Assembly (NCBI RefSeq): GCF_006345805.1
Contig: NC_043002.1
Location: 19,592,001 to 19,656,000, forward strand
Direction of reading: 5' to 3'
DNA from: Octopus sinensis
Lineage: Eukaryota
DNA: 64,000 bases
How positions within the stretch are numbered: position 1 is the first letter of the stretch; the number at the start of each line of letters is the position of its first letter. Positions 6,609-49,602 of the stretch are shown piece by piece. The notes beneath the pieces were generated by a model. It was not told where the DNA came from. It did not search any database and saw nothing but the letters and a program-made list of their open reading frames with translations. A program made the position numbers and the translations under genes.

Positions 6609-6640
<32 letters not shown>

Positions 6641-12861: not shown

Positions 12862-12952
12862 TTATATGTTTGGTCTCGTTTTGTACTTTAAACTATTTTG
12901 AAAACCTGTCTTCAAGAAATTTAAGTAAGACACGGTGGTTGGGTTTTGAAAC
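12862..12952 (-). CDS. SELENON: Selenoprotein N, terminal coding exon 8 (GFQNPTTVSYLNFLKTGFQNSLKYKTRPNI*)
   Basis: Not in the ORF track. Matches SelN C-terminus FEDPSTATYMQFLKEGL. Acceptor ctttctttatctccAG at 12953-12954, phase 2 fits exon 7. TAA at 12862-12864. Confidence 0.9.
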
Positions 12953-13109
12953 CTGGAGATAAAGAAAGAAAGAAAGATAAATTACTTAATAATTATTTTT
13001 CCATATAATTTCCTAATAGTTAAACATTTTACTATATATTGTAAAGGAATCACAAACAGTTAATGAATTTAAATACATACACACGCATATATATATATAT
13101 ATATATATG

Positions 13110-13490
13110 TATACTCTTTACATGTTTCAGTCATTTGACTGTGGCCATGCTGGAGCACCGCCTTTAGTTGAGCAAATCGACCCCGGGACTTATTCTTTGT
13201 AAGCCCAGTACTTATTCAATCGGCCTCTTTCGCCAAACCGCTAAGTGACGGGGACGTAAACACACCAGCATCGGTTGTCAGGCAATGCTAGGGGGACAAA
13301 CACAGACACACATACACATACATATATACGATGGGCTTCTTTCAGTTTCCGTCTACCAAATCCACTCACAAGGCATTGGTCGGCCCGGGGCTATAGCAGA
13401 AGACACTTGCCCAAGATGCCACGCAGTCGGACTGAACCCGGAACCATGTGGTTGGTTAGCAAGCTACTTATCACACAGCCACTCCTGCTG
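13110..13490 (-). mobile_element. tRNA-derived CORE-type SINE
   Basis: tRNA-like head GCAGGAGTGGCTGTGTG...GGGTTCAGTCC and CORE-like GGCATCTTGGGCAAGTGTCTT. A second full copy is at 42480-42850(-), with partial copies at 15520-15640, 19500-19650 and 28910-29130. Confidence 0.78.
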
Positions 13491-14471
13491 TGTATATATA
13501 TATATATATATATGTAAAGATGGATGTATAATGACTGAATTACAATTTCCTCATAGAATTTACTACATGTGCTCGCACACATTATTATTTGAAAGATTTT
13601 GTCCTTCTCTTGTCAAGAACTTGGTTGAGTACATCAAAGAAGTTTTGAGCTAAACATTTTAAGCAACAAATAGCAGTTCTGATATCCAAGGTCACATCAG
13701 ATAGTAGTATAAAAAAAACTTTTCTTGGAATATCTAACTGCAGCCTAAAATCCCTATCTTCACTAAAACTGCATCACAAAGGCATTTTTATTGTTAGTCA
13801 ATAAGACCCCCATTGCATATTTATCTTATAATTGAAGAATGGCATCACTGAATACAAGAGTTTACTGTTTCTGATTGTAAGAATGACAAAAGGGTGTCTG
13901 CCACTCAATACAGAATAAATAACTTAAGGGCTTCATTTGTAAGGATTTTTTTTTTGGTTCGCTTTCTCTCTGACATTTTATCTTTTGCTGACATTCATCA
14001 GTGAAAGATATATCTGCATATCATCATCGTTTAACATCCATTTTCCATGCTGGCATGGGTTGGGCGGTTCGACCGGGGTCTGGGAAGCCAAGAGGCTGCA
14101 CCAGGCTCCAGTCTGATCTGGCAGTGTTTCTACAGCTGGATGCCCTTCCTAACGCCAACCACTCCATGAGTGCAGTGGGTGCTTTTTACATGCCACCGGT
14201 ACAGGTGCCAGGGGAGGTTGGCAACGGCCACGATCAGTTGGTGTTTTTTACGTACCACCGGCATATATATATATAAATTCTGAGTTCCTATTCCTACCTA
14301 CCAAATTCTACTCATAAGCGTTACCCAACAGAGAGTGTAGCCTGGAGATAAGGGTGTTTCACTAGATTGAGTTGCTACTGCTCCACATTGAGAGGTCACA
14401 CCTTTGGTACTACAGACACATGGTTAGAATGCTGCAGAAAAGAATCACAAAATAAATTCTTGAAACCAGGA

Positions 14472-14963
14472 GACCATGACCAAGGTAGTTGGGCACCACA
14501 TGGTGTGGACCACGACCAAGGTAGTTGGGCACCACATGGTGTAGACCACGACCAAGGTAGTTGGGCACCACATGGTGTAGACCACGACCAAGGTAGTTGG
14601 CACCACATGGTGTAGACCACGACCAAGGTAGTTGGGCACCACATGGTGTAGACCACGACCAAGATAGTTGGGCACCACATGGTGTAGACCACGACCAAGG
14701 TAGTTGGGCACCACATGGTGTAGACCACGACCAAGGTAGTTGGGCACCACATGGTGTAGACCACGACCAAGGTAGTTGGGCACCACATGGTGTAGACCAC
14801 GACCAAGGTAGTTGGGCACCACATGGTGTAGACCACGACCAAGATAGTTGGGCACCACATGGTGTAGACCACGACCAAGATAGTTGGGCACCACATGGTG
14901 TAGACCACGACCAAGATAGTTGGGCACCACATGGTGTAGACCACGACCAAGATAGTTGGGCAC
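14472..14963. repeat. 36-bp minisatellite, 13 full units plus one partial, in SELENON intron 7
   Basis: Unit GACCACGACCAAGGTAGTTGGGCACCACATGGTGTA repeated head to tail without spacers. There is a G/A variant at AAG(G/A)T and one 1-nt deletion near 14600. Confidence 0.97.
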
Positions 14964-15883
14964 TACTTAAATACAGAGGGGTTAGGGTTACCTTTCTTTT
15001 ATATCATTACATAGATGCGTGCGTCAGGACCTCCGTATTTAAGAAGTACCATTAGCTGGATAATATCCATAGTCTCGGTTGTGTGTGGGAATCCAGTAAG
15101 AAATTTTAATAATGGTTGCTTCTGATAGGACTCTGTGGAGGAAGTGCCTGATGGCTCAACCTCCACAACCCTCCCAGGGATAGTGGACAGTAAAAACGGA
15201 TGGATGGTAATACTGACAAACACAAGACTACAGTTGAATATAGTTGCCCAAGGTGTTATGCATACAATTGATTTCCAAAACTACTCTTTCCCTGCTATGT
15301 TCTTCAATTTATAGATGTATACTGTAAGTAGGCTCATTTATTCAGGCCACAGTCATCAATTCCACTCCTAGTTCTACAACTTTATTGTAGGGCAGTATCA
15401 CTTTCTTCAACCTTTCTTTTTTCTCTAAGTGGAACTTGAAGAAACAGGGATTGGGTGAAGAGGAGAGTCTGTCCTGAGACCTATTCAAAAAAAAAAAATA
15501 GACACTCATAGTTGTGTAGGTAGGAAGTCTGTTTCATAACCATATGACCTTGGGTGCAATCCCACTGTATAGCACCTCATGAAAGCCTTGGGTCAGCCAA
15601 TACCTTGTGTATGGAATTTGGTAAGTAGAACTATACAGTATTTATGTGGTAGAGGACAGTGTCTGTATTTATGATGTGTCCTTTTATACATCTGTACTTA
15701 GAGATTGATAAATAACAGACAAAATTTAACTACTGAAGTTGATATACTTAAACGAACGAACGAATACTTACAAAATCCATGAAGACAATGCCCTGTCTAA
15801 TGAATGAAATCAGTAAGAAAATAACAGAAATGTAAGTGATTTATTGTACAAACAGTTGATAAAAAAGTTTTAAAATGCCATAC

Positions 15884-16047
15884 CCTGTATTCCAGAAGTC
15901 AGATGGAGCATCAAGGAGATCGTTGGCATTTACTTTATTCAAGATAGTGCCATTGGAGAGAGATACCATCATCATGACAGGAAATTTATAATTCTCAAGG
16001 AACATAGTTGCAACTTTAGCAGCCTCACCTTTGCCTTTCTTCAGATC
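15884..16047 (-). CDS. SELENON: Selenoprotein N, coding exon 7 (DLKKGKGEAAKVATMFLENYKFPVMMMVSLSNGTILNKVNANDLLDAPSDFWNT)
   Basis: Not in the ORF track. Matches SelN [30 protein letters not shown]. Acceptor acttcAG at 16048-16049, donor GG|GTATGG at 15883. 164 nt, phase 0/2. Confidence 0.92.
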
Positions 16048-17287
16048 CTGAAGTCAACAAATAAGAACAAAATAATTTTGATTAATCATCATCGTCATAA
16101 GGTGGATAACCTGTGTAGAGCAGTGGTCTCAATCTAACAAAAACCAGGCCCCATCCAAATTATTAGTGAAATTTCTGTCCCTCTTCCATTTTTGTTAACG
16201 AGAAGACAAAAATTAAACTTGTATCCATATAATTCTCTTTTCTTCACAATGGTAGTGGCTAATTTAAAAAGTTGAAATCCATCTAAAATTTATTAAACAT
16301 GGCAATTTGTCTGCCCAACTTTTCAATCCTCACAGCATCTACCCATCCACATTTCCTTGAGAAACACTGGAGTAGAGCAAAGCTCTATGGTCTGAATAAT
16401 GCGTTTAATCCACTGTCCAAACTTGTATTTCTACTCAGTCTCTTTACTAACAAGTAACTGCCTATTACTGTCTCCCTTTCCTATCAACCTCTCATCCTTA
16501 TCACTTTGTTTCTCCTTTCATACTCTCTCTTCCATTTCCCCTTTTAGTCACATTGCCTTAACCCTTTAACATTCAAATTACTCTGTCAAATGTAATGCTT
16601 ATTTATTCACATTGTTTTGAATTGTCTTATCTTATAGCTTTGAGATTTCTATGATTATTTTTAGAATGACATTGTAGGATAGGTGTGAGAGGCTGGATCC
16701 AGACAGTTTGAACATAAAACAGGAAGAATATATGAGCCTGATATAGTCAGTTTAAATGCTGAAGGGATGAACTCTCAAGTCTTTCAGAGGACAAAGCAAC
16801 TTCTCTAGTGCTGGTGTCATGATAAAAAGCACCCAGTACACTCTATACCAGTGTTTCTCAACCCTTTTACCCTTGCACAACCCATAAAATAAATTATATC
16901 TCAAGAAACCCCTGCACAAGAAAATCTATATACCATATCTAACATTTTTTCATCATAGTTCGTGTGATAAATATCATGTGTATATATATATATATATATA
17001 TATATCATCATCATCATCGTTTAACATCCGCTTTCCATGCTAGCATGGGCTGGACGATTTGACTGAGGTCTGGTGAACCAGATGGCTGCACCAGACTCCA
17101 ATCTGATCTGGCAGAGTTTCTACAGCAGGATGCCCTTCATATATATCATCATCATTATTCCTGCTACAAAGGTAAACATAGAAGTATGGTGATTTTTTTT
17201 TTACTACTAGCTGCAACTTCTGCCCAAAATTAACCTAAAACAAGCTTTCGACAAGCAGAGAAGGAACAGAAATTGGCAACAACTTAC

Positions 17288-17497
17288 CTCAAGATCAACA
17301 ACAAGGCAGGAAGTACTGATAAAGTGTTCCTTAAGGAAAGACATAACGGGCGAACTCTGGAGAGCAGTCTCTCGCAGGGTTCGCCCGGAACCTCAGCAAC
17401 TCTGATCATCTAGTACACCCCATAATATGATGGAGTGAACTAATTTCTGTACAGCCTGGGCCTTTTTAAAGGCTGAAGTAAAGTTGTAATAAGGGAC
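17288..17497 (-). CDS. SELENON: Selenoprotein N, coding exon 6 with in-frame Sec UGA (…[46 protein letters not shown])
   Basis: Homology continues in the same frame past TGA 17393-17395 (known SelN motif [26 protein letters not shown]). Acceptor ttttcAG at 17498-17499, donor GAG|GTAAGT at 17287. 210 nt, phase 0/0. Confidence 0.97.
17348..17386 (-). promoter_or_regulatory. Sec redefinition element (SRE) stem-loop
   Basis: GGGCGAACCCUGCGAGAG-ACUG-CUCUCCAGAGUUCGCCC: 8 bp, a C.A mismatch, 3 bp, a bulged C, 5 bp, then a 4-nt loop. Starts 6 nt after the UGA, as in vertebrate SELENON. Confidence 0.88.
17393..17395 (-). other. Selenocysteine codon (UGA, residue 501)
   Basis: In-frame TGA in the SCUG motif, 105 nt inside an exon, with conserved coding sequence on both sides. 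An SRE and a SECIS are present. Confidence 0.95.
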
Positions 17498-18801
17498 CTG
17501 AAAATATAATTCCGCGTTTAGTAGAAATTCAACATACAGGTACAATACACACAATATACATACAAAAAACACTATACACACACACACACTACACACACAA
17601 AATGGATGGCCATTGCTGGAACACTTTTTGTCATAGGTTTGCATAAGCAGGATTAAAATAGGGGCTAAATAATAATAATAATAAAGAATTTTTTATATGC
17701 TCACCTACATGTACAAACATATGCACACACAACTCAGAATATGTGTATTAACACAGAAACATCCTTTATATTGTGCACAATCATACATCACTTTTTGTAA
17801 TACACACATTGTATTATAATCTATGTCGTTTTTAGCCCAAGTTTATATTGTTTTTTTAGCCAAATTTTGGTTAACAAGAATCAAAAGTATTCCTACTGTA
17901 ACCATTCTATCTTTTTTTATTATGTTTCATTTATCTAATACAAGCTTAAAAACTGCACTTCACGCAGACTTTTAGTCTAACTCCTGCAGAGGGCTAATTG
18001 GGTCTGAGGCCCAAAACTAAAGAGAGCTAAAGAACATGACTATAATACATCTATAATGATTATATGCCCCAGTGGTGTTTGATCAGAAGTTAAGGACAGA
18101 TGAAAATTCAATTCTGGATTGCAATCATTCTATTGTTCCAGGCCCAAGTTGAATTCCAACTATTAGTCAATTTGTCCCAAAGTTTTCATCTTGACATAAA
18201 ATTAACAAAATTAATGTCATTTATCACACTCCTTCATCTCTGGCATCATCTGACAAATGCCAACCAAGAAAGCATGAATCAACCAAGCTTTACCTGCTAG
18301 AAATAGCAATCCAAATGCTTTTAAATCAAATCCTTATACTGGATGTTCAAGAACCAAATGAAGGGCAGATTTTCAATCCAGGGATCATCCTGATTCCAAA
18401 AAGGTATGATATTTCTATACGGAGCAAATGTAGTCTGAGATACAGGTGTCCCAGACAGACAGAATTCCACATTTATATAGATAGACTTTGATATCTTATA
18501 TTTTAAGATGATAGAGTATAATTTAAAGAAAATTTGACTGCTATTTCTATTATGTCGAGTGACTGTACAGAGGTTCTTATTGGTTCATTGGTCAAGCAAG
18601 CATGTAAAAGGCCCCTTCCTTATAATCTGCACAACTGCATTATGTAGGGTATATCATAAAACACTCACACTACATGACATAAATATGCACACACAATGTA
18701 TATAAACATACACATGGTCCGTTGCTTAGCAACAGTTCCAACAAACACACAATGCAAAAAGTCAAACAAAACAAATAAAATATTCTACTAAAGTAACCTA
18801 C

Positions 18802-19040
18802 TTCCTTAAAGGGAAACATTTTGACTTCCATACTTTTCATTGCTTCTTCCATGGAGATTTCTTCCGTCCATGAAATAGATGATATTTCTTGGTTGGTGAC
18901 CGCCTCATCAATACCTTCAAAATCAAGCTGGTTAGCGTGAACAGTAGATCTGCTGAGGGACTTCAGTTCCATTTTGGGTAGAAATCCAATGTTGACTTCC
19001 ATATTGACTTCATCAGCCACATTTGTCAGCCATTCCATGT
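18802..19040 (-). CDS. SELENON: Selenoprotein N, coding exon 5 (DMEWL...NMEVNIGFLPKMEL...ISWTEEISMEEA...MFPFKE)
   Basis: Matches SelN DMEWLY...NMEVDIGYIPQMEL...IKWQQELSWEEA...MYPFKK. Acceptor tttcAG at 19041-19042, donor GTAGGT at 18801. 239 nt, phase 1/0. Confidence 0.96.
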
Positions 19041-20082
19041 CTGAAAGACATACAGAGTTGTAAAACATGAAACGTTTGTATTGTGGGATGTTTTGCATGT
19101 ATGGGTATATAAGTTTGTGAAGGAGAGTATGTGTACATTTGTCTATGTATACATGGTGTGTTTGTGTGTGTGCAAGTATGTATAGGCATGCATGAGCATT
19201 TTTATGTGTGTATGCATGAGTACTTTCTAAATCCTATTGCATTATAAGATGCTGGCTTGAATATACCATCGTTGTCATCTCCATTGTTTTAACATCCACA
19301 TTTTCCATGCTTGCAGGAGTCAGATTTTTCCTATGGCTAGATGCCCTTCCTGTCACCAACTTTGGCTTGTGTCCAGGCAAGATAATACTTCACCAAGGCC
19401 TCACATGTGTTCTTGGAAGATTGGAAATGAAGGACTCTGCTTGAATGATAGTAACTCATAAGTATTCTATGATGTCAAGACAAGAACACACACACACACA
19501 CACATATGCAACAGGTTTCTTTCAGTTTCCATTTACCAAACCCACTCACAGGGTTTTATTGACCCAGCACCATAGTATAAGACACTTTCCATGCTGTGGG
19601 ACTGAATCCAAAACCACAAGGTCAAAAAGCAAACTCTTTATTCATACAGTCTTGAAACATTCTATCTTTCTTCAAGCTATATTCATAGAAGAATTTGAAG
19701 AACCCAGTACTAGGAGCATCTTATCCTTGCATATACTGATAGACTGTCTCAGCTTACAGTTGCTAATGACAGTTAGGTGTGGGGAGATAGCATAGGTGTT
19801 TTGGCTATGGGCACAGTGCAGTACTGGTGACAGGAAAAGAAACTATTTGAACTTTCAGCCAAGAAACCAATTTCCCCTTCAGTCTGGGTACCACTAATTC
19901 AAATGAGCAACACCCCATCAACAGGTTATACATTATTAGGGTTGTATAAATGTAGTTTATTCACACACCAGTCTTCAAATAGCATCATAAACACACAGAT
20001 ACACATACAGACAGACATATGCACACCAGGTATATAAACCACAACACAGCAATACAATATATTTTCACTTATTTCTACTAAC

Positions 20083-20234
20083 CAACATTGAGTTTATTGT
20101 GAGTTGGTACAGCAAGATTGAACTTCAGGAGAGATGTAGCATTTTTGTTGATGATGAGATTGCCAAAGAAATATGCTGGAGTGAACCAAAATGGAAGATT
20201 TGGTCGTTCATTCAGCTGGAACTCTGCATGTATT
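20083..20234 (-). CDS. SELENON: Selenoprotein N, coding exon 4 (RIHAEFQLNERPNLPFWFTPAYFFGNLIINKNATSLLKFNLAVPTHNKLNV)
   Basis: Strong match to SelN RIHAEFQLSEPP.FPFWFSPAQF. Acceptor catacAG at 20235-20236, donor GTTAGT at 20082. 152 nt, phase 2/1. Confidence 0.96.
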
Positions 20235-20332
20235 CTGTATGAATTAAAGATGGAAATGAGAAGAAAGAATATTTTAAATATGTAAACATGAAACTGAATA
20301 CTGAGGTTTTTGATATATACAATATTATACAT

Positions 20333-22010
20333 TCATCATCATCATCATCATCATCGTTTAGCGTCCGCTTTCCATGCTAGCATAGGTTGGACGGTTCAAC
20401 TGGGGTCTGTGAAGCCAGAAGGCTTCATCAGGCCCAGTCAGATCTGGCAGTGTTTCTACGGCTGGATGCCCTTCCTAACGCCAACCACTCCGTGAGTGTA
20501 GTGGGTGCTTTTTACGTGCCAGACAGAGCAGGCAAACGGCCATGAACGGATGGTGCTTTTTATGTGCCACCGGCACGGGGGCCAGGTGAGGCTGGCAACG
20601 GACACGAACGGATGGTGCTTTTTATGTGCCACCGGCACGAGGCCAGTCGGGGCGGCGCTGGCAACGGTTGCAAACGGATGGTTCTCTTACATGTCACCGG
20701 CACTGGTAACACATCTGCAATTTCCATTGATCGGTTTCGATTCTGATCCTCACTTGCCTCAACAGGTCTTCACAAGTAGAGTTTTGTGTCCCAAGAAGGG
20801 AAGGTATGCATATGTAGGCTGCCTCCATCCCATGTAGAAGGCCACAGGTTATGGACTCACTTGTCCTGCCGGGTCTTCTCGCGCACAGCACACTTCCAGA
20901 GGTCTCAGTCATTTCCTCAGTGAGACCTAAAGTTCGAAGGTCGTGCTTCACCACCTCGTCCCAGATTTTCCTGGGTTTGCCTCTTCTTAGGTCCAGCTTT
21001 TCTCTCAAGGTACTTACACTCTGCCGAGTATGAGAACTGACATTACACATCCATCGGAGCATACTGGCTTCATTTCTTGCGAGCTTACGCATATCCTCAG
21101 CAGTCACGGCCCATGTTTCACTGCCATGTAGCATGGCTGTTCGTACACATGCATCATACAGTCTAACTTTTACTCTGAGCGAGAGGCCCTTTGTCACCAG
21201 CAGAGGTAAGAGCTCTCTGAACTTTGCCCAAGCTATTCTTACTCTAGCAGTTACACTTTCAGCACACCCGCCCCCGCTGCTGACTTGGTCACCTAGGTAA
21301 CGGAAACTATCAACTATTTCTAGTTTTTCTCCCTGGAAAGTGACAGAAGTTGGTCTCAGAGCATTTTCAGTGTTTATTGTTCCTCAGCATCTGCCACATA
21401 CAAAAACCATCTTCCTAGTTAGCCTTCCTTTGACATTGCTGCACCTCTTATGTGTCCATAGCTTACACTTGGTGCATCTTATAGAGTTTCTACCTACACC
21501 TTTTCTACAGATCGAGCAGGGCCATCTACCTGAAGGCGTTTGTGATTTGTCTACCTTCCTACTGATTACGACTTTGGTTTTAGCTAGATTGACTCTAAGG
21601 CCCTTCGATTCTAATCCTTGTTTCCACACCTGAAACTTCTCCTCCAGTTCTGATAGCGACTCAGCAATTAGAGCAAGGTCATCAGCATAGAGGAGCTCCC
21701 AAGGGCATCCTGTCTTGAATTCCTCCGTTATTGCCTGGAGGACTATGATAAATAGGAGGGGGCTGAGGACTGAGCCTTGATGGACCCCTACCTCTACCCG
21801 GAATTCTTCACTGTACTCGTTGCCAACCCTTACCTTACTAGCAGCGTCCCTATACATGGCTTGCACAGCTCTCACTAACCATTCATCTATCCCTAGTTTC
21901 CTCATTGACCACCAGATAAGGGATCGAGGGACCCTGTTGAAGGCTTTCTCCATGTCAACAAAAGCCAGGTACAGTGGCTTATCTTTGGCTAGGTATTTCT
22001 CCTGCAGCTG
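20333..22010 (-). mobile_element. 5'-truncated RTE-type LINE (RT to 3' UTR, (GAT)n tail)
   Basis: RT motifs YLAFVDMEKAF, GVHQGSVLSPLLF, LLYADDLAL and the C-terminal RGKPRKIW. 3' UTR has ~55-bp internal repeats and the tail lies at 20333-20356. Confidence 0.92.
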
Positions 22011-22194
22011 CCACGGAGTGGTTGGTGTTAGGAAGAGCATCCAGCTGTAGAAACACTGCTTGATTAGACTGGCACCTGGTGCAGCCTCCTGGCTTCCCAG
22101 ACCCCGGTCAAACCGTCCAACCCATGCTAACATGGAAAACAGACGTTAAACGATGATGATCATCATCATGATCATGTATGTCGTCTGGGGAACT

Positions 22195-26824: not shown

Positions 26825-27186
26825 CTAAAAGCTATGTCCACAAACTCAGAATTGTATGCTCTAACGCAAGCCACAGCTCCTTGTGGTTCAAAACGCGACA
26901 GGAGAAATGGGCGTGGGTGAAACATAGAAAGGAGACTGTGAAAAATAGCTTGGTTGTCTTTGAATAGAGATGGAAAATATCTGTTGCTGCTTGGCATCTG
27001 TCCAGTGATGTACTGGAATCTACTGCCCTCCCACAGTGTGTAGACTTTACCCACAGAGTTCATGAAATCTGGGTTGGTTGGCAGAAAAGGTTTGAAGTGT
27101 TTAGCAGAATATATCATGAGATTCTTCGCTGGTTTTTTCCATTCTTTGAGTCCAGAAAAACACTTCTGAGTTTCCATAATCTGTTC
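26825..27186 (-). CDS. SELENON: Selenoprotein N, coding exon 3
   Basis: Translates CFSGLKEW...HFKPFLP...SNRYFP...IFHSLLSMFHPRPFLLSRFEPQGAVACVRA, the hallmark SelN segment. Acceptor T-tract AG at 27187-27188, donor GTAAGA at 26824. 362 nt, phase 0/2. Confidence 0.96.
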
Positions 27187-28645: not shown

Positions 28646-28756
28646 ACCTTCCTCAATAATCTTCTTCATGGTAGAAGGTGTAAGAGGAACAAAGCTGGCC
28701 TCCACCACTAATGCTTCATCATCAACATCAAACTGGAAATTATACTCGATTGGAAC
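28646..28756 (-). CDS. SELENON: Selenoprotein N, coding exon 2 (VPIEYNFQFDVDDEALVVEASFVPLTPSTMKKIIEEG)
   Basis: Not in the ORF track. Polypyrimidine acceptor ttccttctccAG at 28757-28758 and donor GTAAGT at 28645. 111 nt, phase 0/0. Resembles SELENON EETLTIEARFQPLLPETMTK. Confidence 0.9.
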
Positions 28757-30100: not shown

Positions 30101-31563
30101 CTTGTCACTATCTACAGTCTTTTAGTTGTTCTAGTCATTCAATTGTGACCAACCTCAGGTAGCATCTTGAAGGGCTTAGTCAAACAAACTGACTGCAGTA
30201 CTTATTTTGTTACAATAAATTTATTGTTTCTCCTGCCAATTTCATGCACATTGAAATATATACTTGTTCACAGATTGAGAGAAAAATAACACCAAAGATA
30301 TTTAAATAGCAACATTTAGAGATAGTCACAAAATCCATAGTTTGATGGTGTCATTTTTAATTAATGTAAAAAAATATGTTTTAAAGTATTTTAATCATTT
30401 CTCAACCCATAATCAAAACAATGAAAGCAGGATTAACCGGTTTCAATAGCCAGTTTCACATACCCACAGACTGATGTTGTTGTTGTTTAGTAAGCCTCTC
30501 CTTACCCCTATTCAGCCAATCAGATATCTAGGAGCACAGAAATAGTCAGTCAAACGCATATCATTATCATTTTACACCTGCTTCCTATACAAGCACGGAT
30601 TGAACAGGTAATCAGTCTATGGGAACCATTGCTCCAATAGACCGGTGCTCATACATGTCATTTTGGCTTAGTTTCTACAGCCAGATGCCCTTCCAATTGC
30701 CAAACATTTACAGGGTATATGAGGAGCATTTTCTCATGGTATCAACACTAGAGGAACACTTAAGGGACCTCACAGCCCTATGCTTTCTCTGCTCATTTGC
30801 AACCACTTTACAGTGAGTACTAAGTGCTCTTTTTATGGCACCAGCACTAGAGGGGTTGTCTCACTCTCCAATCACTGAGCAGGAAGCACAGTGTGGAAAA
30901 GTATGAGTTGTGGTACCAACACAGGAAGTGGAGAATACACAGTAATCTAAGACATGAAGACTGCAGAGGGGAGTAGGAGAGAGACAAAAGGAGAGGGTGA
31001 TGACAACAGAAAGGTCAGAGTAAGTGTAGTAAATAATGTTAAGTATATACATTTGTACAGGTGGACAAAAAGAATAGAAAAGAAGTAGTGACAGCAGAAG
31101 AACCAGAATGGATAAATGAAAGGAGTAAGAGTATGATGGAAGGGCATATATTATATATTCTTTTACTTGTTTCAGTCATTTGACAAATAGACAAATATAA
31201 GCCAATAAAAAGCACAAAAAGACTGTTAACTTCACTTTAACATTTATTATATGATGTCAAAATTCTTATCATACCAACTGTGACCCAGTCAATGACACAG
31301 TTCCAAACTATAAATGTTTAAGTGAAGTTGATAGTCTTTGTGTGTTTTTGAATGGCTAATATATTTTCCATGCTGTAATTGTTATTTCATCATCAGCATC
31401 ATTTAACGTCCGTTTTTCCATGCTGGCATGGGTTGAATGGTTCGACAGAAGTTCGCTAAGCAGAAGACTGCACCAGGATTCATTGTCTGTTTTAGCAGGG
31501 TTTTTACAGCTGGAGGCCTTTCCTAACACCAACTTATATATATATATATATATGTATATATAT

Positions 31564-33403
31564 AGTATCAAATTGTTGGATCAGGTGATGAAAGTTACGG
31601 AGAGGGTCATAGCCCAACTAATTAGGGAGAGAGTCTAGATGGGATGCAGTTTGGTTTTGTGACAGGGAGAAGCACCACTGATGCTATATTTCTAGTAAAG
31701 CAGCTGCAGGAGAAAGACATAGCTAAAGATAAACTTCTTTACTTGGCGTTTGTTGACTTGGAGAAAACCTTTGACAGAGTTCCCTGATCCCTTATCTGGT
31801 GGTCAATGTAGAAACTAAGGATAGACGAGTAGTTGGTGAGAGCTGTACAAGCCAAGTACAGGGACACTACAAGTAAGGTGAGGGTTGGCAATGAGTACAG
31901 TGAAGAATTCAGGTACATGTAGGGGTTCACCACGGATCAGTCCTTAGCTCCCTCTTGTTCATCATAGTCCTCCAGGCAATAAGAGAGGAATTTAAGACAG
32001 GCTACCCCCAAGAGCTCCTCTATGTGGATGACATTGTTCTTATAACTAAATCACTACCAGAACTAGAGAAGAAGTTCTAGGTATGGAAACAAGGTCTAGA
32101 ATTGAAGGGCCTAGCAAAAACCAAAGTCTTAGTAAGTAGGAAGGTAGACAAATCACAAATCCCTTCAGGTAGATGGCCCTGCTCAATCTATAGAAAAAGC
32201 ACAGGTAGAAACTCCATAAGATGTACCCAGTATAAGCTTTGGACACATAAAATGTGCAGCAATATCAGAGAAAGGTTAACAAGGGAAATAGCTTTTGTGT
32301 GTGGAAGATGCACAAGTACAATAAACAACGAAACTACAAAAAATAGACTCCAACAACTACCAGTTGGGTAATCTAGAGGTAGTAGATAACTTCCATTATG
32401 TAGGTGAGCAAGTTAATAGCAGAGGTGGATGCTCACAGAGAATAGCTGTGAAAATAAGAATAGGCTGGACAAAGTTCAGGAGCTCCCACTTCTGCTGACA
32501 ACAAAGGGCCTCTCCCTCAGAGTGAAAGGTAAATTGTATGATATCTGTGTGTGAACAGCTATGCTACATGGCAGTGATACATGGGCTGTGACAGCCAAGG
32601 ACATGCATAGGCTTGAAAGAAATGATGCCAGTATGCTTTGCTGGATGTGCAATGTCAGTGTGCATGTTCAACAGAGTATAAGCATCTTGAGAGAAAAGTT
32701 GGACATAAGAGGCATCAGATGTGGTGCACAAGAGAGACAACTGCACTGGTATGGTCATGTGATGCATATGGACAAGGACAGCTGTGTAAAGAAGTGCTGA
32801 TCTCTAACTGTGGAGGGAACCCATAGAGGTAGACCCAGGAAGACATGGGATGAAGTGGTGAAACATGATCTTCGAACTTCGGGCCTCACAGAGGCAATGA
32901 CTAATGACTGAGATCTTTGGTGATATGCTGTGCTTGAGAAGACCTGTCAAGCCAAGTGAAATCATAGTCATGGCTGATGCTGGTGTCATGTAACTGGTAC
33001 CTGTGCTGGTGGCTCATAAAAAGCATCTTTTGAGTGTTGGGTCTCACAGAGGCAAAGTAGCAGATGCTGGTGGCACATGAAAAACTCCTTTCAAGTGTTG
33101 TAACTTACAGAGGCAATGACCAAGACCTTTGGCATTCTGTTGTGCTTGAGAAGAAGACCCATCAAGCCAAGTGAAATTGCAGTCATGGCAGATACCAGTG
33201 TCACACAAATGGCACCCATGCTGGTGGCACGTAAAAGCACCCGTTACACTATCAGAATGGTTGGCATTAGGAAGGACATCCAGCTATAGAAACCATGCCA
33301 AATCAGACTGGAGTCTGGTGCTGCCCCTCAGCTTGCCAGCCCTGGTCAAATAGTCCAACCCATGCTAGCATGGACAATGGACACTAAATGATGATGATGA
33401 TGA
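31564..33403 (+). mobile_element. Degenerate RTE-type LINE (same family, multiple stops and frameshifts)
   Basis: IKLLDQVMKVTERVIAQLIRERV, LAKTKVLVSRKVDKSQIPSGRWPCSI and MLHGSDTWAVTA fragments. (GAT)n tail near 33390. Confidence 0.9.
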
Positions 33404-34374
33404 TATTTATATTACATATACATGCAGGTGGCATGTCCATGCAGGTGGCACATCCGTGCAGATAGCATGTAAAAAGCCGTACAGGTGGCACGTATAAAGC
33501 ACCCACTACACTCTCGGATTTGTTGGTGTTAGGAAGGGCATCAAGCTGCAGAAACTCTGCCGGATCAAGACTGGAGCCTGGTGCAGCCATCTGGTTGCCA
33601 GCCCTCAGTCAAAACCGTTCAACCCATGCTAGCATGGAAAACGGATGTTAAACAATGATGATGATGCACATATACACACACACATTCATACATAGACATG
33701 AATGTATATAAAGCATATGTACATATGTATACATGTGCATGTATTACAGACATGACTGTATTCAAGTTTGACTTTTTTTTATCAAGGATTTTTTATATTT
33801 ATTTATTTGTCCTTTATGTTCAGTTTGAAACAATGGTGTTCCTAAAATTTGTCTGTTTCAAGATTTTCATAATCCCACCAGTGTTAATGAACAAATGGAT
33901 TTAGAAGAAAATATTAAGCTAAAGTTTTATTTTTGTAAATTAGGCATGAGGCTATTCATATCCGCCTTTTTTTTTTACTTAATTCAAACTTTAGATGAAA
34001 AGATGAAGGTAAAGTCAAACTAGGCTGGATTTGAACTCAAAACGAAAGAGTCATAACTAAATATCACATGATCTAACAATTCTGCCATCTCATAATAATT
34101 CTAATAATTATCAGATTAAATAATGAGGTATTCAAATTTACAATAAACATTAACATATTTTGTTTGTTTCTGTTAGCATCAAATCAGCTGTGAATCGGTA
34201 GATCTACAATCAAGACATTCCAACCATGGCTACTTCATTTTCTTTTCAGTTGATAAAGTGTGATTTGAGGGAGAATTAGCTGCTATTAAAAACTCTCAGT
34301 TTCTTTTATTGGTGTGAGTATATTCAAGTAGAAATATATTCATACATTACAAGTGTATGTGTGCATGCACAGCA

Positions 34375-34412
<38 letters not shown>

Positions 34413-34792
34413 GCTTTTACACATGTTCCCAGCCACTCTCACCTATACAGAAAAAACAAAGAAATGCCCTACTTTCTTTTTAAAACAACTTGTTTTCCTT
34501 CTCAGCTACCTGAAACAGTTACTATTCATTATTAACAAGCAACACCAAAAATTACACACCCTCTATAATTTTCTTAAAACCTAAGGCAACTCCTAAATAT
34601 TTACACAATAGAATGAACAAAAGTCACATTTACAATATGACTTTTTCCCACTAAGTTATCATTACAAGAACAGAAACATTGTTTGGAACTGCAACAATGG
34701 ATTTCTACAAATGGTGGGGTAATAGTATTAAGATATTGTTGGCAGTAGCTGATAGAACCAGTAGACCTGGACAAAATGCCTTGTGGTGTTTC

Positions 34793-36396
34793 ATCATCAT
34801 CATCATCATCATCATCGTTTAGCGTCCGTTTTCCATGCTAGCATGGGTTGGACGGTTCAACTGGGGTCTGTGAAGCCAGAAGGCTTTATCAGGCCCAGTC
34901 AGATCTGGCAGTGTTTCTACGGCTGGATGCCCTTCCTAATGCCAACCACTCCGTAAGTGTAGTGGGTGCTTTTTACGTGTCACCCGCACAGGTGCCAGAC
35001 AGAGCTGGCAAACGGCCACGAACGGATGGTGCTTTTTATGTGCCACCGGCACGGGGGCCAGGTGAGGCTGGCAACGGACACGAACGGATGGTGCTTTTTA
35101 CGTGCCACCGGCATGAGGCCAGTCGGGGCGGTGCTCTTACATGCCACCGGCACTGGTAACACATCTGCAATTTCCATTGATCGATTTCGATTCTGATCCT
35201 CACTTGCCTCAACAGGTCTTCACAAGTAGAGTTTTGTGTCCCAAGAAGGGAAGGTATGCATACGTAGGCTGGCTCCATCCCATGTAGAAGGCCACAGGTT
35301 ATGGACTCACTTGTCCTGCCGGGTCTTCTCGCACACAGCACACTTCCAGAGGTCTCGGTCTCTAGTCATTTCCTCAGTGAGACCTAAAGTTTGAAGGTCG
35401 TGCTTCACCACCTCGTCCCAGATTTTCCTGGGTCTGCCTCTTCCGCAGGTTCCCTCAACCACTAGGGTGTGGCACTTTTTCACACAACTGTCTTCATCCA
35501 TTCTCGCCACATGACCATACCAGCGCAAACGTCTCTCTTGCACACCACAACTGATGCTTCTTAGGTCCAGCTTTTCTCTCAAGGTACTTACAATCTGCCA
35601 AGGGCATCCTGTCTTGAATTCCTCCGTTATTGCCTGGAGGACTATGATAAATAGGAGGGGGCTGAGGACTGAGCCTTGGTGGACCCCTACCTCTACCCGG
35701 AATTCTTCACTGTACTCGTTGCCAACCCTTACCTTACTAGCAGCGTCCCTATACATGGCCCGCACAGCTCTCACTAACCATTCATCTATCCCTAGTTTCC
35801 TCATTGACCACCAGATAAGGGATCGGGGGACCCTGTCGAAGGCTTTCTCCATGTCAACAAAAGCCAGGTACAGGGGCTTATCTTTGGCTAGGTATTTCTC
35901 CTGCAGCTGCCTTACCAGGAATATAGCATCAGTGGTACTTTTCCCTGGCACAAACCCAAACTGCATCTCATCTAAACTAACTCTCTCTCTAATTAGTTGG
36001 GCTATGACCCTCTCCGTAACCTTCATCACCTGATCCAACAGCTTGATACCTCTGTAGTTATTTGTATCTAGGGCGTCACCTTTACCTTTGTAGCAGTTGA
36101 CTATTATGCTGCTACACCAGTCATTGGGTATGACTCCTTTGTGTATCACCTGATTAACTATACGGGTGACTAGGCTATAGCCGACACTACCAGACATTTT
36201 GAGCATCTCTGCAGTGATTCCTGATGGGCCTGGGGCTTTCCCTGTCTTCATGCTTCTAATTGCCTTAGCTACCACGGAACTATCAACTCGGATAGCTGGT
36301 CCCTCTGTTGGGTCAACATTCGGCAGACTCTCTTTATCCCATTCATTTTCTTTATTCAGCAACCTTTCATAGTGGCGTTTCCAAACCTCTCTCTTT
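34793..36396 (-). mobile_element. RTE-type LINE, 5'-truncated with internal in-frame deletion
   Basis: 351-aa ORF (KAPGPSGITAEML, NYRGIKLLD, GFVPGKSTTDAIF, GVHQGSVLSPLLF) that lacks the YADD region. Same 3' UTR as the 20333-22010 copy. Confidence 0.93.
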
Positions 36397-36416
36397 GTTT
36401 AGTTACATCAATTTAA

Positions 36417-36844
36417 CCCTTTAGCATTCAGATGTAATGTTTATTTATTCACACTGTTTTGGATTAACCCTTTCGTTACCATATATATTTTGAGATGCTC
36501 TGTTTCTTTCAATTAATTTTAAATAAAACAAAGTATTTAGTAAAATAACTTAGTTATCATTCAGCTAGGGTTAAGAGCATAAATTGTGACTAAAGTTTGA
36601 TGGAAGATTTTAATTCAAAACTTATAAAAACAAAGCATTTGTACTAGAGCCAGAGGCAGTTCAGCCAGGTTGGTATTGAAAGGGTTAATCATGCATCATC
36701 TTGTAGCGTCAAGATTTTGATGATGTGGTTGTTTATTTTTACAATGACATTGTAGAGTAAGTGTGAGAAGCCTGATATGACCAGTTTGAACATAAAACAG
36801 GTAGAATATTTGGGATGGATATAACTGGTTTAAGTACTAAAGGG
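36417..36844. mobile_element. Nested piggyBac-like MITEs
   Basis: Inner element 36468-36684 is TTAA-CCCTTTCGTTACC...GGTATTGAAAGGG-TTAA. Outer element is TTAA-CCCTTTAGCA...TACTAAAGGG. An uninterrupted relative of the outer element is at 16562-16766. Confidence 0.75.
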
Positions 36845-39691
36845 CTAAAGTTTGAATTTAAATCACAGAAATTAATTTTGCCTTGTTTTCATAGGCCTCA
36901 CAAAATAAGTATAACTCAATAGATTTAATCCTTCAACCAGTTTAACACCACTATATGGATTTTGGTTATCTTTATCAAATTCCACCAGATTGCAAATATT
37001 TGGTTCAGGGCTCCAGCAAGTCAAAGGATAATCTTAGAGTTATAGTTCTTCACCTCTCCCTCCAGAAGTCTTGGAAGTGGATGAGTGCCACAAAATACTC
37101 ATGGCTGCTACATGCTCATCTCCTCTGAATAAACCAACAAAACGAATTTAATCAGCCATGATTCCGTTGAAATACTTAATCTTGTGACTATTTTAGAAAA
37201 CATACTATTGTTGCAATGTTGGCAAAGGTTGACAGCAGAATCAGTAGAGCTGCTAAACAAAATCTCCAGTGGTATTTAGATAGTTACATTCCTTTATCCC
37301 ATCAAGGATGTTTTGGGCTTTCATCCTTCTGGAGTCTATAAAATAGTTACTAGAGGCAATTCAATCAACCAACCTGCTTCTGTCACTCATAAAAATATAT
37401 TTGTGGCATTGAATCTAATTTAGAAAATATTACTGCTTTAATGACAAACCTATAATGGTGAATGGTAGATCAGTAAAGCACTGGGGAAAATGCCATAGAG
37501 TATTTACTTAAGACTCTTTACCATGCTGTGTTCAAGTCCCACAAAACTCAACTTTCTGTTCATCTCTCTAGGAGTAAGTACTATGGCAAGATCTAGGACT
37601 CATAGGGCCAGTTACTCATTTCTGTGGTCATAACATTTCCAACACCTGTCTATCACAGGGTTACTAATTTTTAGCTGGACTGAAGCAATATGAAATGAAG
37701 CATTTTGCTTGAGAACGCAATGCAGTGCTCAGTCCAGGAACTGAAACCATGATCTTGAGAGCGCAACACTGTAACCATTAGTTCATCTACCTTCATACTA
37801 TAAGCACAAGTTATTTATTGACTACACCCTTACTCTATATGTAGGTAGTGGGTAGTGATTTTCTTCACTACTTCAGGGAGTGACAACCCTGTCTGACATG
37901 AGTCCCAGGCTCAGCTAGCTCCAGCTGACAGTACCCGGTATGGGACCCTATCCAGGGTTACGGAAGGAGACAACCTTCAAAGAAATCCGGAGTGGAGCCC
38001 CGTAGGCAGGTTAGTGTTCGACTCAACACTCTTCTGGCAGCTCCTGCAACCAAGCTAGTGCCAAACGTAATGCTCTGCACTCCTTTGGACTACGTCAGCA
38101 AGGTCGAGGAAGGAATCCTGACGATTGGGCTACCTAGGATTTTCTTACATCTAGCCCAGGCCTGCGCAAAACTGGAGAGGACATGAAATGTAAAAACCAG
38201 ACTGGATTAATTTATGTGCAACTCCATTGTCTCCCAAGACAAAAGGATGCCAACAACTCTAAATATTTTGTATCCTTATTAGGTGATATCCTTATTGAGT
38301 AAGTGTAAGTTTCTATCTAAAGTCTATTGAATAATTTCTATTCCCAATTCTTTACTGCTCACTCATTGAATTCATGAGAAAGGTATGAAATCTACCCCAT
38401 TTAATTTTGCATCTCCCACATAAATGAAATTTTAATCAGCATTATTATCATAGAAATAATACCAAATCACATTTTCATCATTACCATCACTATTAACATC
38501 TGTTTTCCATGCTGGTATGTGTTGGGTGGTTTGACAGGAGCTGGAAAACCAGAACACTGCACCAAACTCTATTTGCTTGCTTTGGCATAGTTTCTACAGC
38601 TAGATACTCTTCCCGACTTAAACCACTTTACAGACTGCTTTTTAGGTAGCACCAGCAAGGTCACCAAATAATTTGCAAGGCAAGATCCTTCAACTGATCA
38701 TCTAAAAATACACACACACATCGGATAGGAGGAACTAAGGATTTTTTAACTGCTAGCCACACACAGTAATCATGGCTAGAAGGTCTTTCATGATATATCT
38801 ATCACTAGTAAAGCAGCAAAGAAGGCTATACATGGTCGCTGGAACTGCTAGAACTAGCAGCCAAATTTTCTTCAGACTCCACTACCTTAAAAAAAAGTAA
38901 TAATACATTAAAGAGAGTATTCCAAGATGAGCTATGCCTGAAAACTAGATGGTATATTCATAGCTGAAATATCTTTGACTCTAAGTCAACTGTGCCCAGA
39001 ATAAACAACAACAAATGTAATCTGTATTAAGATTTGAACACATATCTATGCCCCTTAATCTCACAACAGTTTCAAAGTTAACACTCATATTTCTGTTGTT
39101 TTAATCCTCAGATCAAATTTGAAATAAGTTTCAGTTAATTACTCTTCATTATCAACAATATTACCGTCACATACACACACACGTAAACTACAAGGTTAAA
39201 AAATCTTTCTAATATAGGCACAAACTAGAAATTATAGGAGGGTGGTAGTTGATTATATTGTCTCCAGTATTTGATCGATATTTATTTTATCGATCCTAAA
39301 AAAAAAAAAAAGGAGAAGTTGGGCTAGACGTGATTTGAACTCACATTGTAAAGATCCAGAAAAAGTACCGCAAAACATTTTGTTTGATGCTAAGGCTTTT
39401 TATATATAACCCACAACCTGATGATTAAGAGATTAGTATCACGTTTAATGATGCTACTGAATTTAGAGATAAGTGCAACTTTTATCAACCTTGGATATTT
39501 GAGAAGACATCATTATTACCGGCAGTTGATTAAATATCTAAATGTCTTACTTAGATTCGTCGTTAAAGTTGTATCGTGCCTAGCCATGTTCTTTGTGTGT
39601 TTGAATGAGACAAAGTGTGTGTGTATGTGTGTGTACTGAGAGCTCAATTAAGTGTACGTGATGCATAGGGAGGGTATAATATTCTACTTAC

Positions 39692-40225
39692 CCTGACGTC
39701 AATTAATCTATGGGTAATCGGAATAAATTCATTTAAAGACAAATAACCGTCTTCATCAAAGTCATATTGGTCGAACAACGTCAGTCCCGCCTCGCCTACG
39801 CTGCCCAGAAGTTCTTGCTTGGCATTTTCGTAGTTCAATTTCTCAATTGATTTCTTGTACAAAATAGCAACTACAGCAACAATGATGCTCAACCAAAACA
39901 ACCAGGATTTCATATACTTCATGCAGTTAAAAAATTTCATTTTTATTTTTGAATCGCCAGTTTTTTTGCCTTTCTTATTTTGCATTCGTTGGTCTTTCGT
40001 GACATCATTGCGGTTCGAACTCGAGTTGGTATTTACATCTCTAGAAAAGTTATCGGAATTCCGATGAGAAGAAGAAGCAGCTTCCTTTGATTTCTTCGGT
40101 GAACTCTTGTTTGTCTGTCGGTTCCTTGATTCAGGATATTTAGGACTCGGTGGAATCGTCTTATTGCCTAACTTGGCAGGAGACCGCGTAACGACGGAAC
40201 CAGAAGGCCCCGTCGTACTGGCCAT
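39692..40225 (-). CDS. SELENON: Selenoprotein N, coding exon 1 (aa 1-178: long basic N-terminus, TM helix, EF-hand)
   Basis: ATG at 40225. The ORF-track start at 40258 is a GTG. Translation has a TM segment WLFWLSIIVAVVAILY, then ELLGSVGEAGLTLFDQYDFDEDGYLSLNEFIPITHRL, resembling SELENON [35 protein letters not shown] (recalled). Donor AGG|GTAAGT at 39691, phase 0. Confidence 0.9.

Positions 40226-49569: not shown

Positions 49570-49602
<33 letters not shown>

What the first reader, a model, noticed from the sequence alone, without database searches (positions are those of the whole stretch)
12862..40225. Hidden complete selenoprotein N gene whose 'stop codon' is selenocysteine
Seen: eight minus-strand exons with GT-AG boundaries splice in frame to 620 codons plus stop. 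The ORF track ends at TGA 17393-17395, but homology ([12 protein letters not shown]) continues for 35 more codons in the same exon and through two further exons that the track misses. Established: SelN is an ER membrane selenoprotein with an EF-hand and an SCUG redox motif. Inference: automated annotation probably truncates or mis-splices this gene at the UGA.
Basis: partly seen in the sequence, partly recalled or inferred. Interest (0 to 1): 0.75.

Follow-up and report, generated by a model that had tools for sequence, protein, structure and literature searches.

The report
Octopus selenoprotein N gene, complete
This is the octopus copy of the well-known selenoprotein N gene, whose in-frame TGA encodes selenocysteine; it is an ordinary gene, but public octopus annotations cut it in two at that codon.

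Summary
The observation and the interpretation both hold. Eight minus-strand exons (40225 to 12862), all with GT-AG boundaries, splice to 620 codons plus TAA. The only in-frame stop is TGA at codon 501 (17395-17393), inside [12 protein letters not shown].

The spliced protein matches named selenoprotein N proteins at E about 1e-115. Six distinct orthologous mRNAs and the Argonauta hians genome all keep this TGA, followed by 114-127 conserved codons. Identity after the TGA is about the same as before it.

Both recoding signals are present:
- **Hairpin after the UGA:** it starts 6 nt downstream, folds at -33.1 kcal/mol (z -5.6), and its 8-bp lower stem pairs in 7 of 7 species with compensatory changes.
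- **SECIS element:** it lies 190-250 nt after the stop at 12672-12611. The Rfam score is below threshold (21.5 bits), but it is the only such hit in 32 kb. It is conserved in O. vulgaris and Argonauta with compensatory changes.

The window is about 97% identical to the O. vulgaris genome. Public records for O. vulgaris and O. bimaculoides give a 500-aa product that ends exactly at the UGA. O. vulgaris and Argonauta annotate the C-terminus as a separate "hypothetical protein".

This is a known gene family, a known mechanism and a known annotation failure, so interest is low.

The parts
39692..40225 (-). Exon 1 (CDS, 534 nt, codons 1-178). It starts at ATG 40225 and encodes a low-complexity N-terminal extension of about 100 aa, the transmembrane helix and the EF-hand. 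The donor is AGG|GTAAGT.
   Evidence: One search gives the splice model. One search shows a gapless match to the first 500 aa of the O. vulgaris and O. bimaculoides products. One search shows 98.1% nt identity to O. vulgaris, making it the fastest-evolving exon.
39851..39913 (-). Predicted single transmembrane helix, residues about 105-125 (MKSWLFWLSIIVAVVAILY...).
   Evidence: It has the highest Kyte-Doolittle 19-residue window in the protein, 1.96. It aligns with the hydrophobic N-terminal segment of the orthologues.
39722..39778 (-). EF-hand, residues 150-168. The loop is D155-F-D157-E-D159-G160-Y-L162-S-L-N-E166.
   Evidence: Pfam EF-hand_6 scores 19.1 bits, below the cut-off of 25. Loop positions 1, 5 and 12 are invariant and position 3 is nearly invariant across 30 SelN proteins.
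28646..28756 (-). Exon 2 (111 nt, phase 0/0).
   Evidence: colinear with cephalopod mRNAs.
26825..27186 (-). Exon 3 (362 nt). It contains the SMFHPRPF motif.
   Evidence: It is 100% identical to O. vulgaris.
20083..20234 (-). Exon 4 (152 nt). It contains IHAEFQLNE...PFWFTP.
18802..19040 (-). Exon 5 (239 nt). It contains DMEWL...NMEVNIGF.
17288..17497 (-). Exon 6 (210 nt). It carries the Sec codon, with 34 codons before it and 35 after it in the same exon.
   Evidence: It is 100% identical to O. vulgaris. The Argonauta orthologous exon has TGA at the same place.
17393..17395 (-). TGA, codon 501, read as selenocysteine within SC-U-G.
   Evidence: It is the only in-frame stop. The same column holds TGA in 6 distinct orthologous mRNAs and in Argonauta.
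17347..17387 (-). Selenocysteine codon redefinition element (SRE), a hairpin inside the coding sequence. Its conserved stem starts 6 nt after the UGA.
   Evidence: The minimum free energy is -33.1 kcal/mol with z=-5.58, and 0 of 200 shuffles fold as well. The 8-bp lower stem is paired in 7 of 7 sequences, with GC/CG and AU/GC compensatory changes.
15884..16047 (-). Exon 7 (164 nt). It contains YKFPVMMMVSLSNGT...NAND.
   Evidence: There is 1 synonymous difference from O. vulgaris.
12862..12952 (-). Exon 8 coding part (91 nt), including the TAA stop at 12864-12862.
   Evidence: It is 100% identical to O. vulgaris.
12611..12672 (-). SECIS element core: AUGA, a 9-10 bp helix II, an AAA apical motif and UGAU. 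It lies 190-250 nt after the stop codon.
   Evidence: Rfam SECIS_1 scores 21.5 bits against a gathering score of 35. It is the only SECIS_1 hit in window 1-32000 on both strands. The same element occurs in O. vulgaris with a 2-nt change in the loop only and in Argonauta at 21.0 bits. There is a compensatory CG to UA change in helix II.
12582..12693 (-). Extended SECIS structure: helix I plus a long outer stem of about 17 bp that encloses the core.
   Evidence: RNAalifold consensus on Octopus, O. vulgaris and Argonauta, with a compensatory CG to UA change in helix I. It lies within the only stretch of the roughly 1.06 kb after the stop (12861-11800) that aligns to Argonauta (window about 12815-12581, 72% identity, E=8e-33). 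The first 300 nt of the 3'UTR have 0 substitutions against O. vulgaris.
12467..12481 (-). Two overlapping-range AATAAA hexamers, probable poly(A) signals, about 380-395 nt after the stop.
   Evidence: This is a pattern match only; use as the poly(A) site is inferred.

Best explanation
The region holds the intact octopus orthologue of SELENON (selenoprotein N, SEPN1). The species is an Octopus very close to O. vulgaris. The eight exons encode a 620-residue protein made up of:
- a cytosolic N-terminal tail;
- one transmembrane helix;
- a luminal EF-hand;
- a large conserved luminal region that ends in a thioredoxin-like domain.

The redox motif Ser-Cys-Sec-Gly of that domain uses the TGA at 17395-17393 as a selenocysteine codon. 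Two mRNA structures direct the decoding. The SRE hairpin starts 6 nt after the UGA and favours recoding locally. A SECIS element in a short 3'UTR recruits SBP2, eEFSec and Sec-tRNA.

Shown here: the gene model, the orthology, conservation of the TGA and of the downstream reading frame, and conservation with covariation of both RNA elements. Inferred from what is known of the family: actual Sec insertion, ER localisation, and the calcium-sensing redox function (protection and activation of SERCA). The current public two-gene models, 500 aa plus 103 aa, are annotation artefacts of reading UGA as stop.
For: - **Gene model:** 8 exons, all GT-AG, 620 codons, one in-frame TGA.
- **Orthology:** named selenoprotein N proteins match at E=1e-115 to 1e-127, with 39-45% identity over 76-89% of the query.
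- **The same gene in Octopus:** the first 500 codons equal O. vulgaris 'selenoprotein N-like isoform X2' except for 6 substitutions, and the last 103 residues are identical to CAI9724857.1.
- **TGA kept in orthologues:** six distinct spliced mRNA contigs and the Argonauta genome carry TGA at the homologous position, followed by 114-127 codons to TAA or TAG.
- **Selection after the TGA:** identity is 42-54% after the UGA and 41-53% before it; pN is 0.28-0.36 against pS of 0.66-0.87.
- **SRE:** -33.1 kcal/mol, z=-5.58; the 8-bp stem is paired in 7 of 7 sequences, with 2 covarying pairs.
- **SECIS:** 21.5 bits with the canonical AUGA/AAA/UGAU motifs, on the sense strand, 190 nt after the stop. 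The reported E=1.1 covers 4227 families, so it is about 3e-4 for this one family. It is the only such hit in 32 kb.
- **SECIS in orthologues:** homologous hits in Argonauta (21.0 bits) and in other SelN mRNAs (19.2-30.6 bits, all in sense-strand 3'UTRs). Two compensatory pairs occur among octopods.
- **Fold:** a model of the sea-urchin orthologue places the motif between strand 1 and helix 1 of a thioredoxin-like fold. Its top PDB matches are DsbH, DsbD-gamma and ERp19. A product that stopped at the UGA would therefore lack almost the whole domain.
Against: - No transcript or protein data exist for this species. Junctions and expression rest on colinearity with mRNAs of other cephalopods and on independent gene calls.
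- The SECIS scores below Rfam's gathering threshold, and an unconstrained single-sequence fold does not give the SECIS shape (z=-0.15).
- The internal loop is asymmetric, with about 10 nt on its 3' side.
- The Pfam EF-hand hit is below the cut-off.
- The Sec machinery (tRNA-Sec, SBP2, eEFSec) is not in the window, and no tRNA was found.
- The start codon is uncertain. ATG 40225 is the first in frame, but Met81 and Met96 are possible, and squid-like orthologues lack the extension.
Confidence: 0.94

Rival explanations
1. The TGA is a true stop. On this reading the locus holds two genes, as the public annotations show: a 500-aa truncated SelN-like protein, and an independent 103-aa protein translated from Met518.
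For: This is how O. vulgaris, O. bimaculoides and Argonauta hians are annotated. There is an in-frame ATG 17 codons after the TGA.
Against: The 16 codons between the TGA and that ATG ([16 protein letters not shown]) are the most conserved part of the region, and they are in frame in the same exon. The SRE and SECIS are present and covary. The thioredoxin-like fold spans the UGA. Every orthologue keeps TGA rather than any other stop codon.
Confidence: 0.02
2. The UGA is read through, but not as selenocysteine. One route is near-cognate Trp or Cys insertion. In a cephalopod, another route is A-to-I editing of UGA to UGG.
For: Cephalopods edit mRNA extensively (general knowledge). A stable hairpin lies beside the codon. 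The SRE is reported to stimulate read-through of UGA and UAG on its own (PMC2248747).
Against: A conserved SECIS sits in the 3'UTR. The same UGA, SRE and SECIS arrangement occurs in bivalve-like and annelid-like orthologues and in vertebrates, where Sec insertion is established (PMC12839072). The UGA lies 6 nt outside the duplex.
Confidence: 0.02
3. The gene is a recently inactivated or unexpressed copy in this species. It would then be a pseudogene that still looks intact.
For: No expression data exist for this genome. The introns are full of retroelement fragments and repeats.
Against: There are no frameshifts or extra stops. Exons 2-8 differ from O. vulgaris at 4 of about 1330 positions, against about 0.7-2% in introns. 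The C-terminal 103 aa are identical. The first 300 nt of the 3'UTR have no substitutions. All splice sites are intact.
Confidence: 0.02

Closest known systems
Vertebrate SELENON / SEPN1 (human selenoprotein N, 590 aa, Sec458 in SCUG)
   Same: The architecture matches: N-terminal transmembrane helix, EF-hand, conserved luminal region, and SCUG in a thioredoxin-like domain. There is a single UGA followed by an SRE hairpin, and a SECIS in the 3'UTR. Identity is 39-45% over about 80% of the length (PMC12839072).
   Different: The octopus gene has 8 coding exons. The human gene has 13 by my recollection, which was not checked here. The octopus protein has an S/K/N-rich N-terminal extension of about 100 aa that vertebrates and squid-like orthologues lack. 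Its 3'UTR is very short, with the SECIS about 190 nt from the stop. Function has not been tested in any mollusc, as far as my searches found.
O. vulgaris CAI9724856.1 'selenoprotein N-like isoform X2' plus CAI9724857.1 'Hypothetical predicted protein'; O. bimaculoides A0A0L8HM81
   Same: This is the same gene. There are 6 of 500 substitutions in the N-terminal part and 0 of 103 in the C-terminal part. The locus is about 96-99% identical at nucleotide level.
   Different: The public models stop at the UGA and split the gene in two. The model here joins them through Sec501 into one 620-aa protein.
Other eukaryotic selenoprotein genes with an SRE next to the UGA (the subset described by Howard and co-workers, cited in PMC2248747 and PMC12839072)
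   Same: A stable hairpin lies a few nucleotides 3' of the UGA inside the coding sequence. It is conserved at the RNA level, with compensatory changes that also change amino acids (G to A and P to R in columns 17/53).
   Different: Nothing unusual; this is the SelN SRE itself.
Thioredoxin-fold oxidoreductases (DsbH, DsbD-gamma, ERp18/ERp19, AGR2/3)
   Same: They share the fold of the C-terminal domain, and the redox motif sits after strand 1 (on the sea-urchin orthologue).
   Different: The motif is C-U-G instead of C-x-x-C. Sequence identity is only 9-19%, and no PDB relative is found by sequence.

Membership tests
SELENON (selenoprotein N) | Full-length sequence orthology to named SelN proteins | tested here: met
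   390 hits. Named SelN proteins from fish, mammals, coelacanth and bivalves match at E=1e-100 to 1e-127; 113 invariant columns shared with 29 SelN proteins.
SELENON (selenoprotein N) | In-frame UGA within the S-C-U-G redox motif, conserved in orthologues | tested here: met
   (codon 501...[17 protein letters not shown]). TGA in the same column in 6 distinct orthologous mRNAs and in Argonauta.
SELENON (selenoprotein N) | Coding sequence continues under purifying selection after the UGA | tested here: met
   identity is 42-54% after the UGA and 41-53% before it, with pN well below pS. E=4.5e-44 to the Argonauta C-terminal fragment.
SELENON (selenoprotein N) | SECIS element in the 3'UTR on the sense strand | tested here: met
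   SECIS_1 at 21.5 bits, below the gathering score of 35, with AUGA/AAA/UGAU; the only such hit in 32 kb; the homologous element in Argonauta and O. vulgaris has 2 compensatory pairs. Caveat: the score is sub-threshold and the evidence is structural only.
SELENON (selenoprotein N) | SRE hairpin immediately 3' of the UGA | tested here: met
   (z=-5.58); the 8-bp stem is paired in 7 of 7 sequences, with compensatory changes at 2 pairs and a 6-nt spacer.
SELENON (selenoprotein N) | EF-hand calcium-binding loop N-terminal to the conserved region | tested here: inconclusive
   Pfam EF-hand_6 at 19.1 bits against a cut-off of 25. The loop DFDEDGYLSLNE has the canonical residues at positions 1, 3, 5, 6, 8 and 12, and D, D and E are invariant in 30 SelN proteins. 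Calcium binding was not tested.
SELENON (selenoprotein N) | Single N-terminal transmembrane helix (type II ER membrane protein) | tested here: met
   hydropathy peak of 1.96 at residues 105-123, aligned with the hydrophobic segment of the orthologues. Topology and ER residence are inferred.
SELENON (selenoprotein N) | Thioredoxin-like fold with Sec at the active-site position | tested here: inconclusive
The model has pLDDT 70.7. The C-terminal domain scores 80-95, but the motif loop is below 50. Foldseek hits thioredoxin-fold proteins at E=3e-4 and above, with TM 0.5-0.7 normalised on the target.
SELENON (selenoprotein N) | Selenium actually incorporated; redox and calcium-sensing function | not testable with these tools
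   This needs 75Se labelling, mass spectrometry and functional assays.

The most novel reading that the evidence does not exclude
In octopus, the UGA of SelN could be subject to two competing recoding routes. One is SECIS-directed selenocysteine insertion. The other is cephalopod A-to-I editing of UGA to UGG, which would give a Trp form. Selenium supply or the editing level would then set the ratio of an active Sec enzyme to an inactive full-length protein. Nothing here supports this reading; it is simply not excluded without RNA-seq.
Probability: 0.02. Interest if true: 0.55.

Novelty: already known. Interest (0 to 1): 0.2.

Why it matters
The practical value is curation. The public Octopus and Argonauta protein sets contain a SelN that lacks nearly all of its catalytic thioredoxin-like domain, plus a spurious "hypothetical protein". 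Anyone counting selenoproteins, building orthogroups or studying ER redox and calcium control in cephalopod muscle would be misled.

The corrected 620-aa model, together with the SRE and SECIS coordinates, repairs this. It also adds an octopod data point for SECIS and SRE evolution. It does not reveal a new kind of gene or mechanism. [quoted passage not shown]

Tried and rejected
- **Rfam at gathering thresholds, whole window:** no hit. The SECIS appears only with the E-value threshold. This seems usual for invertebrate SelN SECIS elements, because the orthologues score 19-31 bits.
- **Protein search with the 70-aa Sec exon alone:** nothing found. The full-length query worked.
- **Unconstrained single-sequence folding of the SECIS:** it gives a different structure with z=-0.15, so it is uninformative. 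Non-Watson-Crick GA pairs are not modelled. Alignment folding was used instead.
- **My own SECIS pattern scan:** it found 7 loose matches in 128 kb, so it has low specificity and serves only as support.
- **Divergence from O. vulgaris in the CDS after the UGA:** 1 difference in 360 nt, against about 1.3% in introns. This is only marginally significant (about P=0.05 by my Poisson estimate), so I relied on more distant orthologues.
- **SECIS in two orthologue contigs:** none was detected in L008 or L011. L008's contig holds only 551 nt after its stop codon and may end before its SECIS.
- **O. bimaculoides genomic locus:** not on record.
- **Structure prediction of the spliced window protein:** I did not try to get round this. 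Within the tool's stated rules I modelled a database orthologue instead, and I report that result as a proxy only.
- **PDB sequence search:** no relatives.
- **Bacterial promoter and terminator scan:** irrelevant to a eukaryotic gene.
- **Literature searches for octopus or cephalopod SelN:** nothing specific was found.


Full report

Yes. Reading the minus strand around 17393-17395 gives ...[49 protein letters not shown], followed by GTAAGT. The mechanical ORF list ends at 17393.

I located the eight exons from open minus-strand segments and fixed each boundary on the sequence. I then spliced them by script. The exons are 40225-39692, 28756-28646, 27186-26825, 20234-20083, 19040-18802, 17497-17288, 16047-15884 and 12952-12862. 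Every intron is GT...AG and the phases agree. The sum is 1863 nt, which is 620 codons plus TAA. The only internal stop is TGA at codon 501, and 35 codons follow it in exon 6. All numbers in the finding are reproduced.

**2. What is it?**

The spliced protein hits 390 database proteins.
- The best hit is O. vulgaris "selenoprotein N-like isoform X2", with 99% identity. It covers only 81% of the query because that record is 500 aa long.
- Next come sea-urchin, fish, mammalian, coelacanth and bivalve proteins named selenoprotein N, at E=1e-100 to 1e-127.

The window DNA is about 96-99% identical to O. vulgaris chromosome OX597819.1, introns included. The source is therefore an Octopus very close to O. 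vulgaris. The first 500 codons differ from O. vulgaris at 6 residues, all in the N-terminal 104 aa. They differ from O. bimaculoides at 40 residues.

**3. Is the TGA a selenocysteine codon?**

Four independent lines say yes.

(a) Conservation of the codon and of the frame. Assembled mRNA contigs from public RNA-seq and metatranscriptome runs give six distinct orthologues. Two look like other cephalopods (53% identity); the rest look bivalve-like or annelid-like. All carry TGA at the homologous position, and 114-127 further conserved codons follow, ending in TAA or TAG. The Argonauta hians genome has [32 protein letters not shown] in the orthologous exon. Identity of the window protein to these orthologues is 42-54% after the UGA and 41-53% before it. 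Non-synonymous differences (0.28-0.36) lie far below synonymous ones (0.66-0.87). None of the seven splice junctions introduces a gap against the spliced cephalopod mRNAs.

(b) The SRE. The 41 nt at 17387-17347 fold into a hairpin of -33.1 kcal/mol. The z-score is -5.58, and 0 of 200 shuffles fold as well. In an alignment of seven species, the 8-bp lower stem is paired in all seven. There are GC/CG exchanges in three sequences and AU/GC/GU exchanges at a second pair. The stem starts 6 nt after the UGA. Some of these compensatory changes alter the protein (GSG to GSA, SSP to SSR), which shows selection on the RNA. This matches the element described for SEPN1 (PMC12839072, PMC2248747).

(c) The SECIS. 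Rfam's SECIS_1 model matches 12672-12611 on the sense strand, 190-250 nt after the stop. The match has AUGA, a helix II of 9-10 bp, AAA and UGAU. The score is 21.5 bits, below the gathering score of 35. The reported E=1.1 is corrected for 4227 families. For the one family that was expected in advance, it corresponds to about 3e-4 in the 8.8 kb searched; this is my arithmetic from the tool's definition. It is the only SECIS_1 match in window 1-32000 on either strand.

Orthologues score similarly, always in the sense-strand 3'UTR: 30.6, 24.9 and 19.2 bits in three mRNAs, and 21.0 bits in Argonauta. In O. vulgaris the element is identical apart from a 2-nt deletion in the apical loop.

The window stretch about 12815-12581, which contains the SECIS and ends about 280 nt after the stop, is the only part of the roughly 1.06 kb after the stop (12861-11800) that aligns to Argonauta (72% identity, E=8e-33). 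RNAalifold on the three octopods gives helix I, an internal loop holding AUGA and UGAU, helix II and an apical AAA. It also gives a long outer stem. There is one CG to UA compensatory pair in helix I and one in helix II. The first 300 nt of the 3'UTR have no substitutions against O. vulgaris, compared with 2-2.7% further downstream. AATAAA hexamers follow at 12481 and 12472.

(d) Protein logic. A structure model of the sea-urchin orthologue has mean pLDDT 70.7, with 80-95 in the C-terminal domain but below 50 in the motif loop. It places the motif between the first strand and first helix of a thioredoxin-like fold. Its best PDB matches are DsbH-type domains, DsbD-gamma, ERp19/ERp18 and AGR2/3. 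A protein ending at the UGA would keep only the first strand of that domain. This is a proxy result, because the tool did not accept the spliced window protein.

**4. Other family features**

A hydropathy peak at residues 105-123 marks the single transmembrane helix. The loop DFDEDGYLSLNE at 155-166 has all the canonical EF-hand positions, and its D, D and E are invariant among 30 SelN proteins. However, Pfam scores it below the cut-off. Octopus has an S/K/N-rich N-terminal extension of about 100 aa that the squid-like orthologues lack. It evolves faster than the rest of the protein, so the true start codon is uncertain.

**5. The annotation claim**

This claim was verified. O. vulgaris CAI9724856.1 and O. 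bimaculoides A0A0L8HM81 are both exactly 500 aa and end at DDQSC. The window's last 103 residues are, letter for letter, O. vulgaris CAI9724857.1 "Hypothetical predicted protein", which is called as a separate gene 49 nt downstream. Argonauta hians has the same split, 479 aa plus 104 aa. Models from Mactra, Mytilus, Solemya, Owenia and Porites skip or mis-splice the Sec region. No full-length octopus SelN appeared among the database hits. These are the error classes "Stop codon", "Downstream" and "Skipped" catalogued for vertebrates in PMC12822975. The general problem has been known since at least Selenoprofiles (PMC2958745).

**6. Rivals**

- **A true stop with two genes.** This is contradicted by the in-frame conservation of the 16 codons between the TGA and the next ATG, by the SRE and SECIS, and by the fold spanning the codon.
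- **Non-Sec read-through or UGA-to-UGG editing.** This is not excluded without RNA or protein data. It is unnecessary, because the same signals occur in lineages where Sec insertion is established.
- **A silent pseudogene.** This is unlikely, given the intact frame and splice sites and the low exon divergence.

**7. Verdict**

The locus is the octopus SELENON orthologue, complete with Sec codon, SRE and SECIS. The family, the mechanism and the annotation failure are all already known, and the gene already carries the name "selenoprotein N-like". The contribution is a corrected gene model, not a discovery. Interest is 0.2.

Noticed in passing
window 10018-10160: A 143-bp MITE-like element with terminal inverted repeats of about 26 nt (TAAGGTTGTCCCAAAAGTTCGTA...), flanked by a TA duplication. 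The orthologous O. vulgaris site (L007 about 41074-41077) is empty and has a single TA. This is therefore a lineage-specific or polymorphic Tc1/mariner-type MITE insertion. It gives weak Rfam mir-548 hits on both strands.
   Followed up: partly
window 14471-14963 (SelN intron 7): A 36-bp tandem repeat of 13.7 copies with 98% matches. O. vulgaris appears to have fewer copies, because offset BLAST alignments all map to L007 36411-36727.
   Followed up: partly
window 35310-36398, 21387-22145 and 20697-21383 (minus strand, SelN introns 1 and 3): Open reading frames with reverse-transcriptase domains (Pfam RVT_1, E about 1e-21), one with a PHD-like zinc finger. They are fragments of non-LTR retroelements in the same orientation as the gene. 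Short SINE-like units (translated ...RLASVFHASMGWTV...) recur many times in both orientations.
   Followed up: partly
window 50213-51009 and 51781-52577; also 45431-46933 and 49566-53222: An inverted duplication of 797 nt at 85% complementarity inside kilobase-scale TG/TA/ATAC microsatellite blocks. These blocks explain the extreme GC and AT skews at 44-54 kb.
   Followed up: partly
L015 (Argonauta hians BAAFZT010000090.1), genes at 1-9952 and 10001-13221: The Argonauta annotation splits SelN at the UGA in the same way as Octopus, into a 479-aa product and a 104-aa 'hypothetical protein'. Its SECIS is at L015 13410-13475.
   Followed up: yes
alignment A1 columns 17/53 (window 17385 and 17349): Compensatory GC/CG changes in the SRE stem coincide with amino-acid changes (GSG to GSA, SSP to SSR) in annelid-like orthologues. 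RNA structure appears to constrain the protein sequence next to the active site.
   Followed up: partly
window 57320-58165 (+): A 281-aa ORF with a retroelement-like look (…GLPKIHK…RPIVAGP…) but no Pfam hit at E<=0.001. It is probably a degraded mobile-element fragment.
   Followed up: partly
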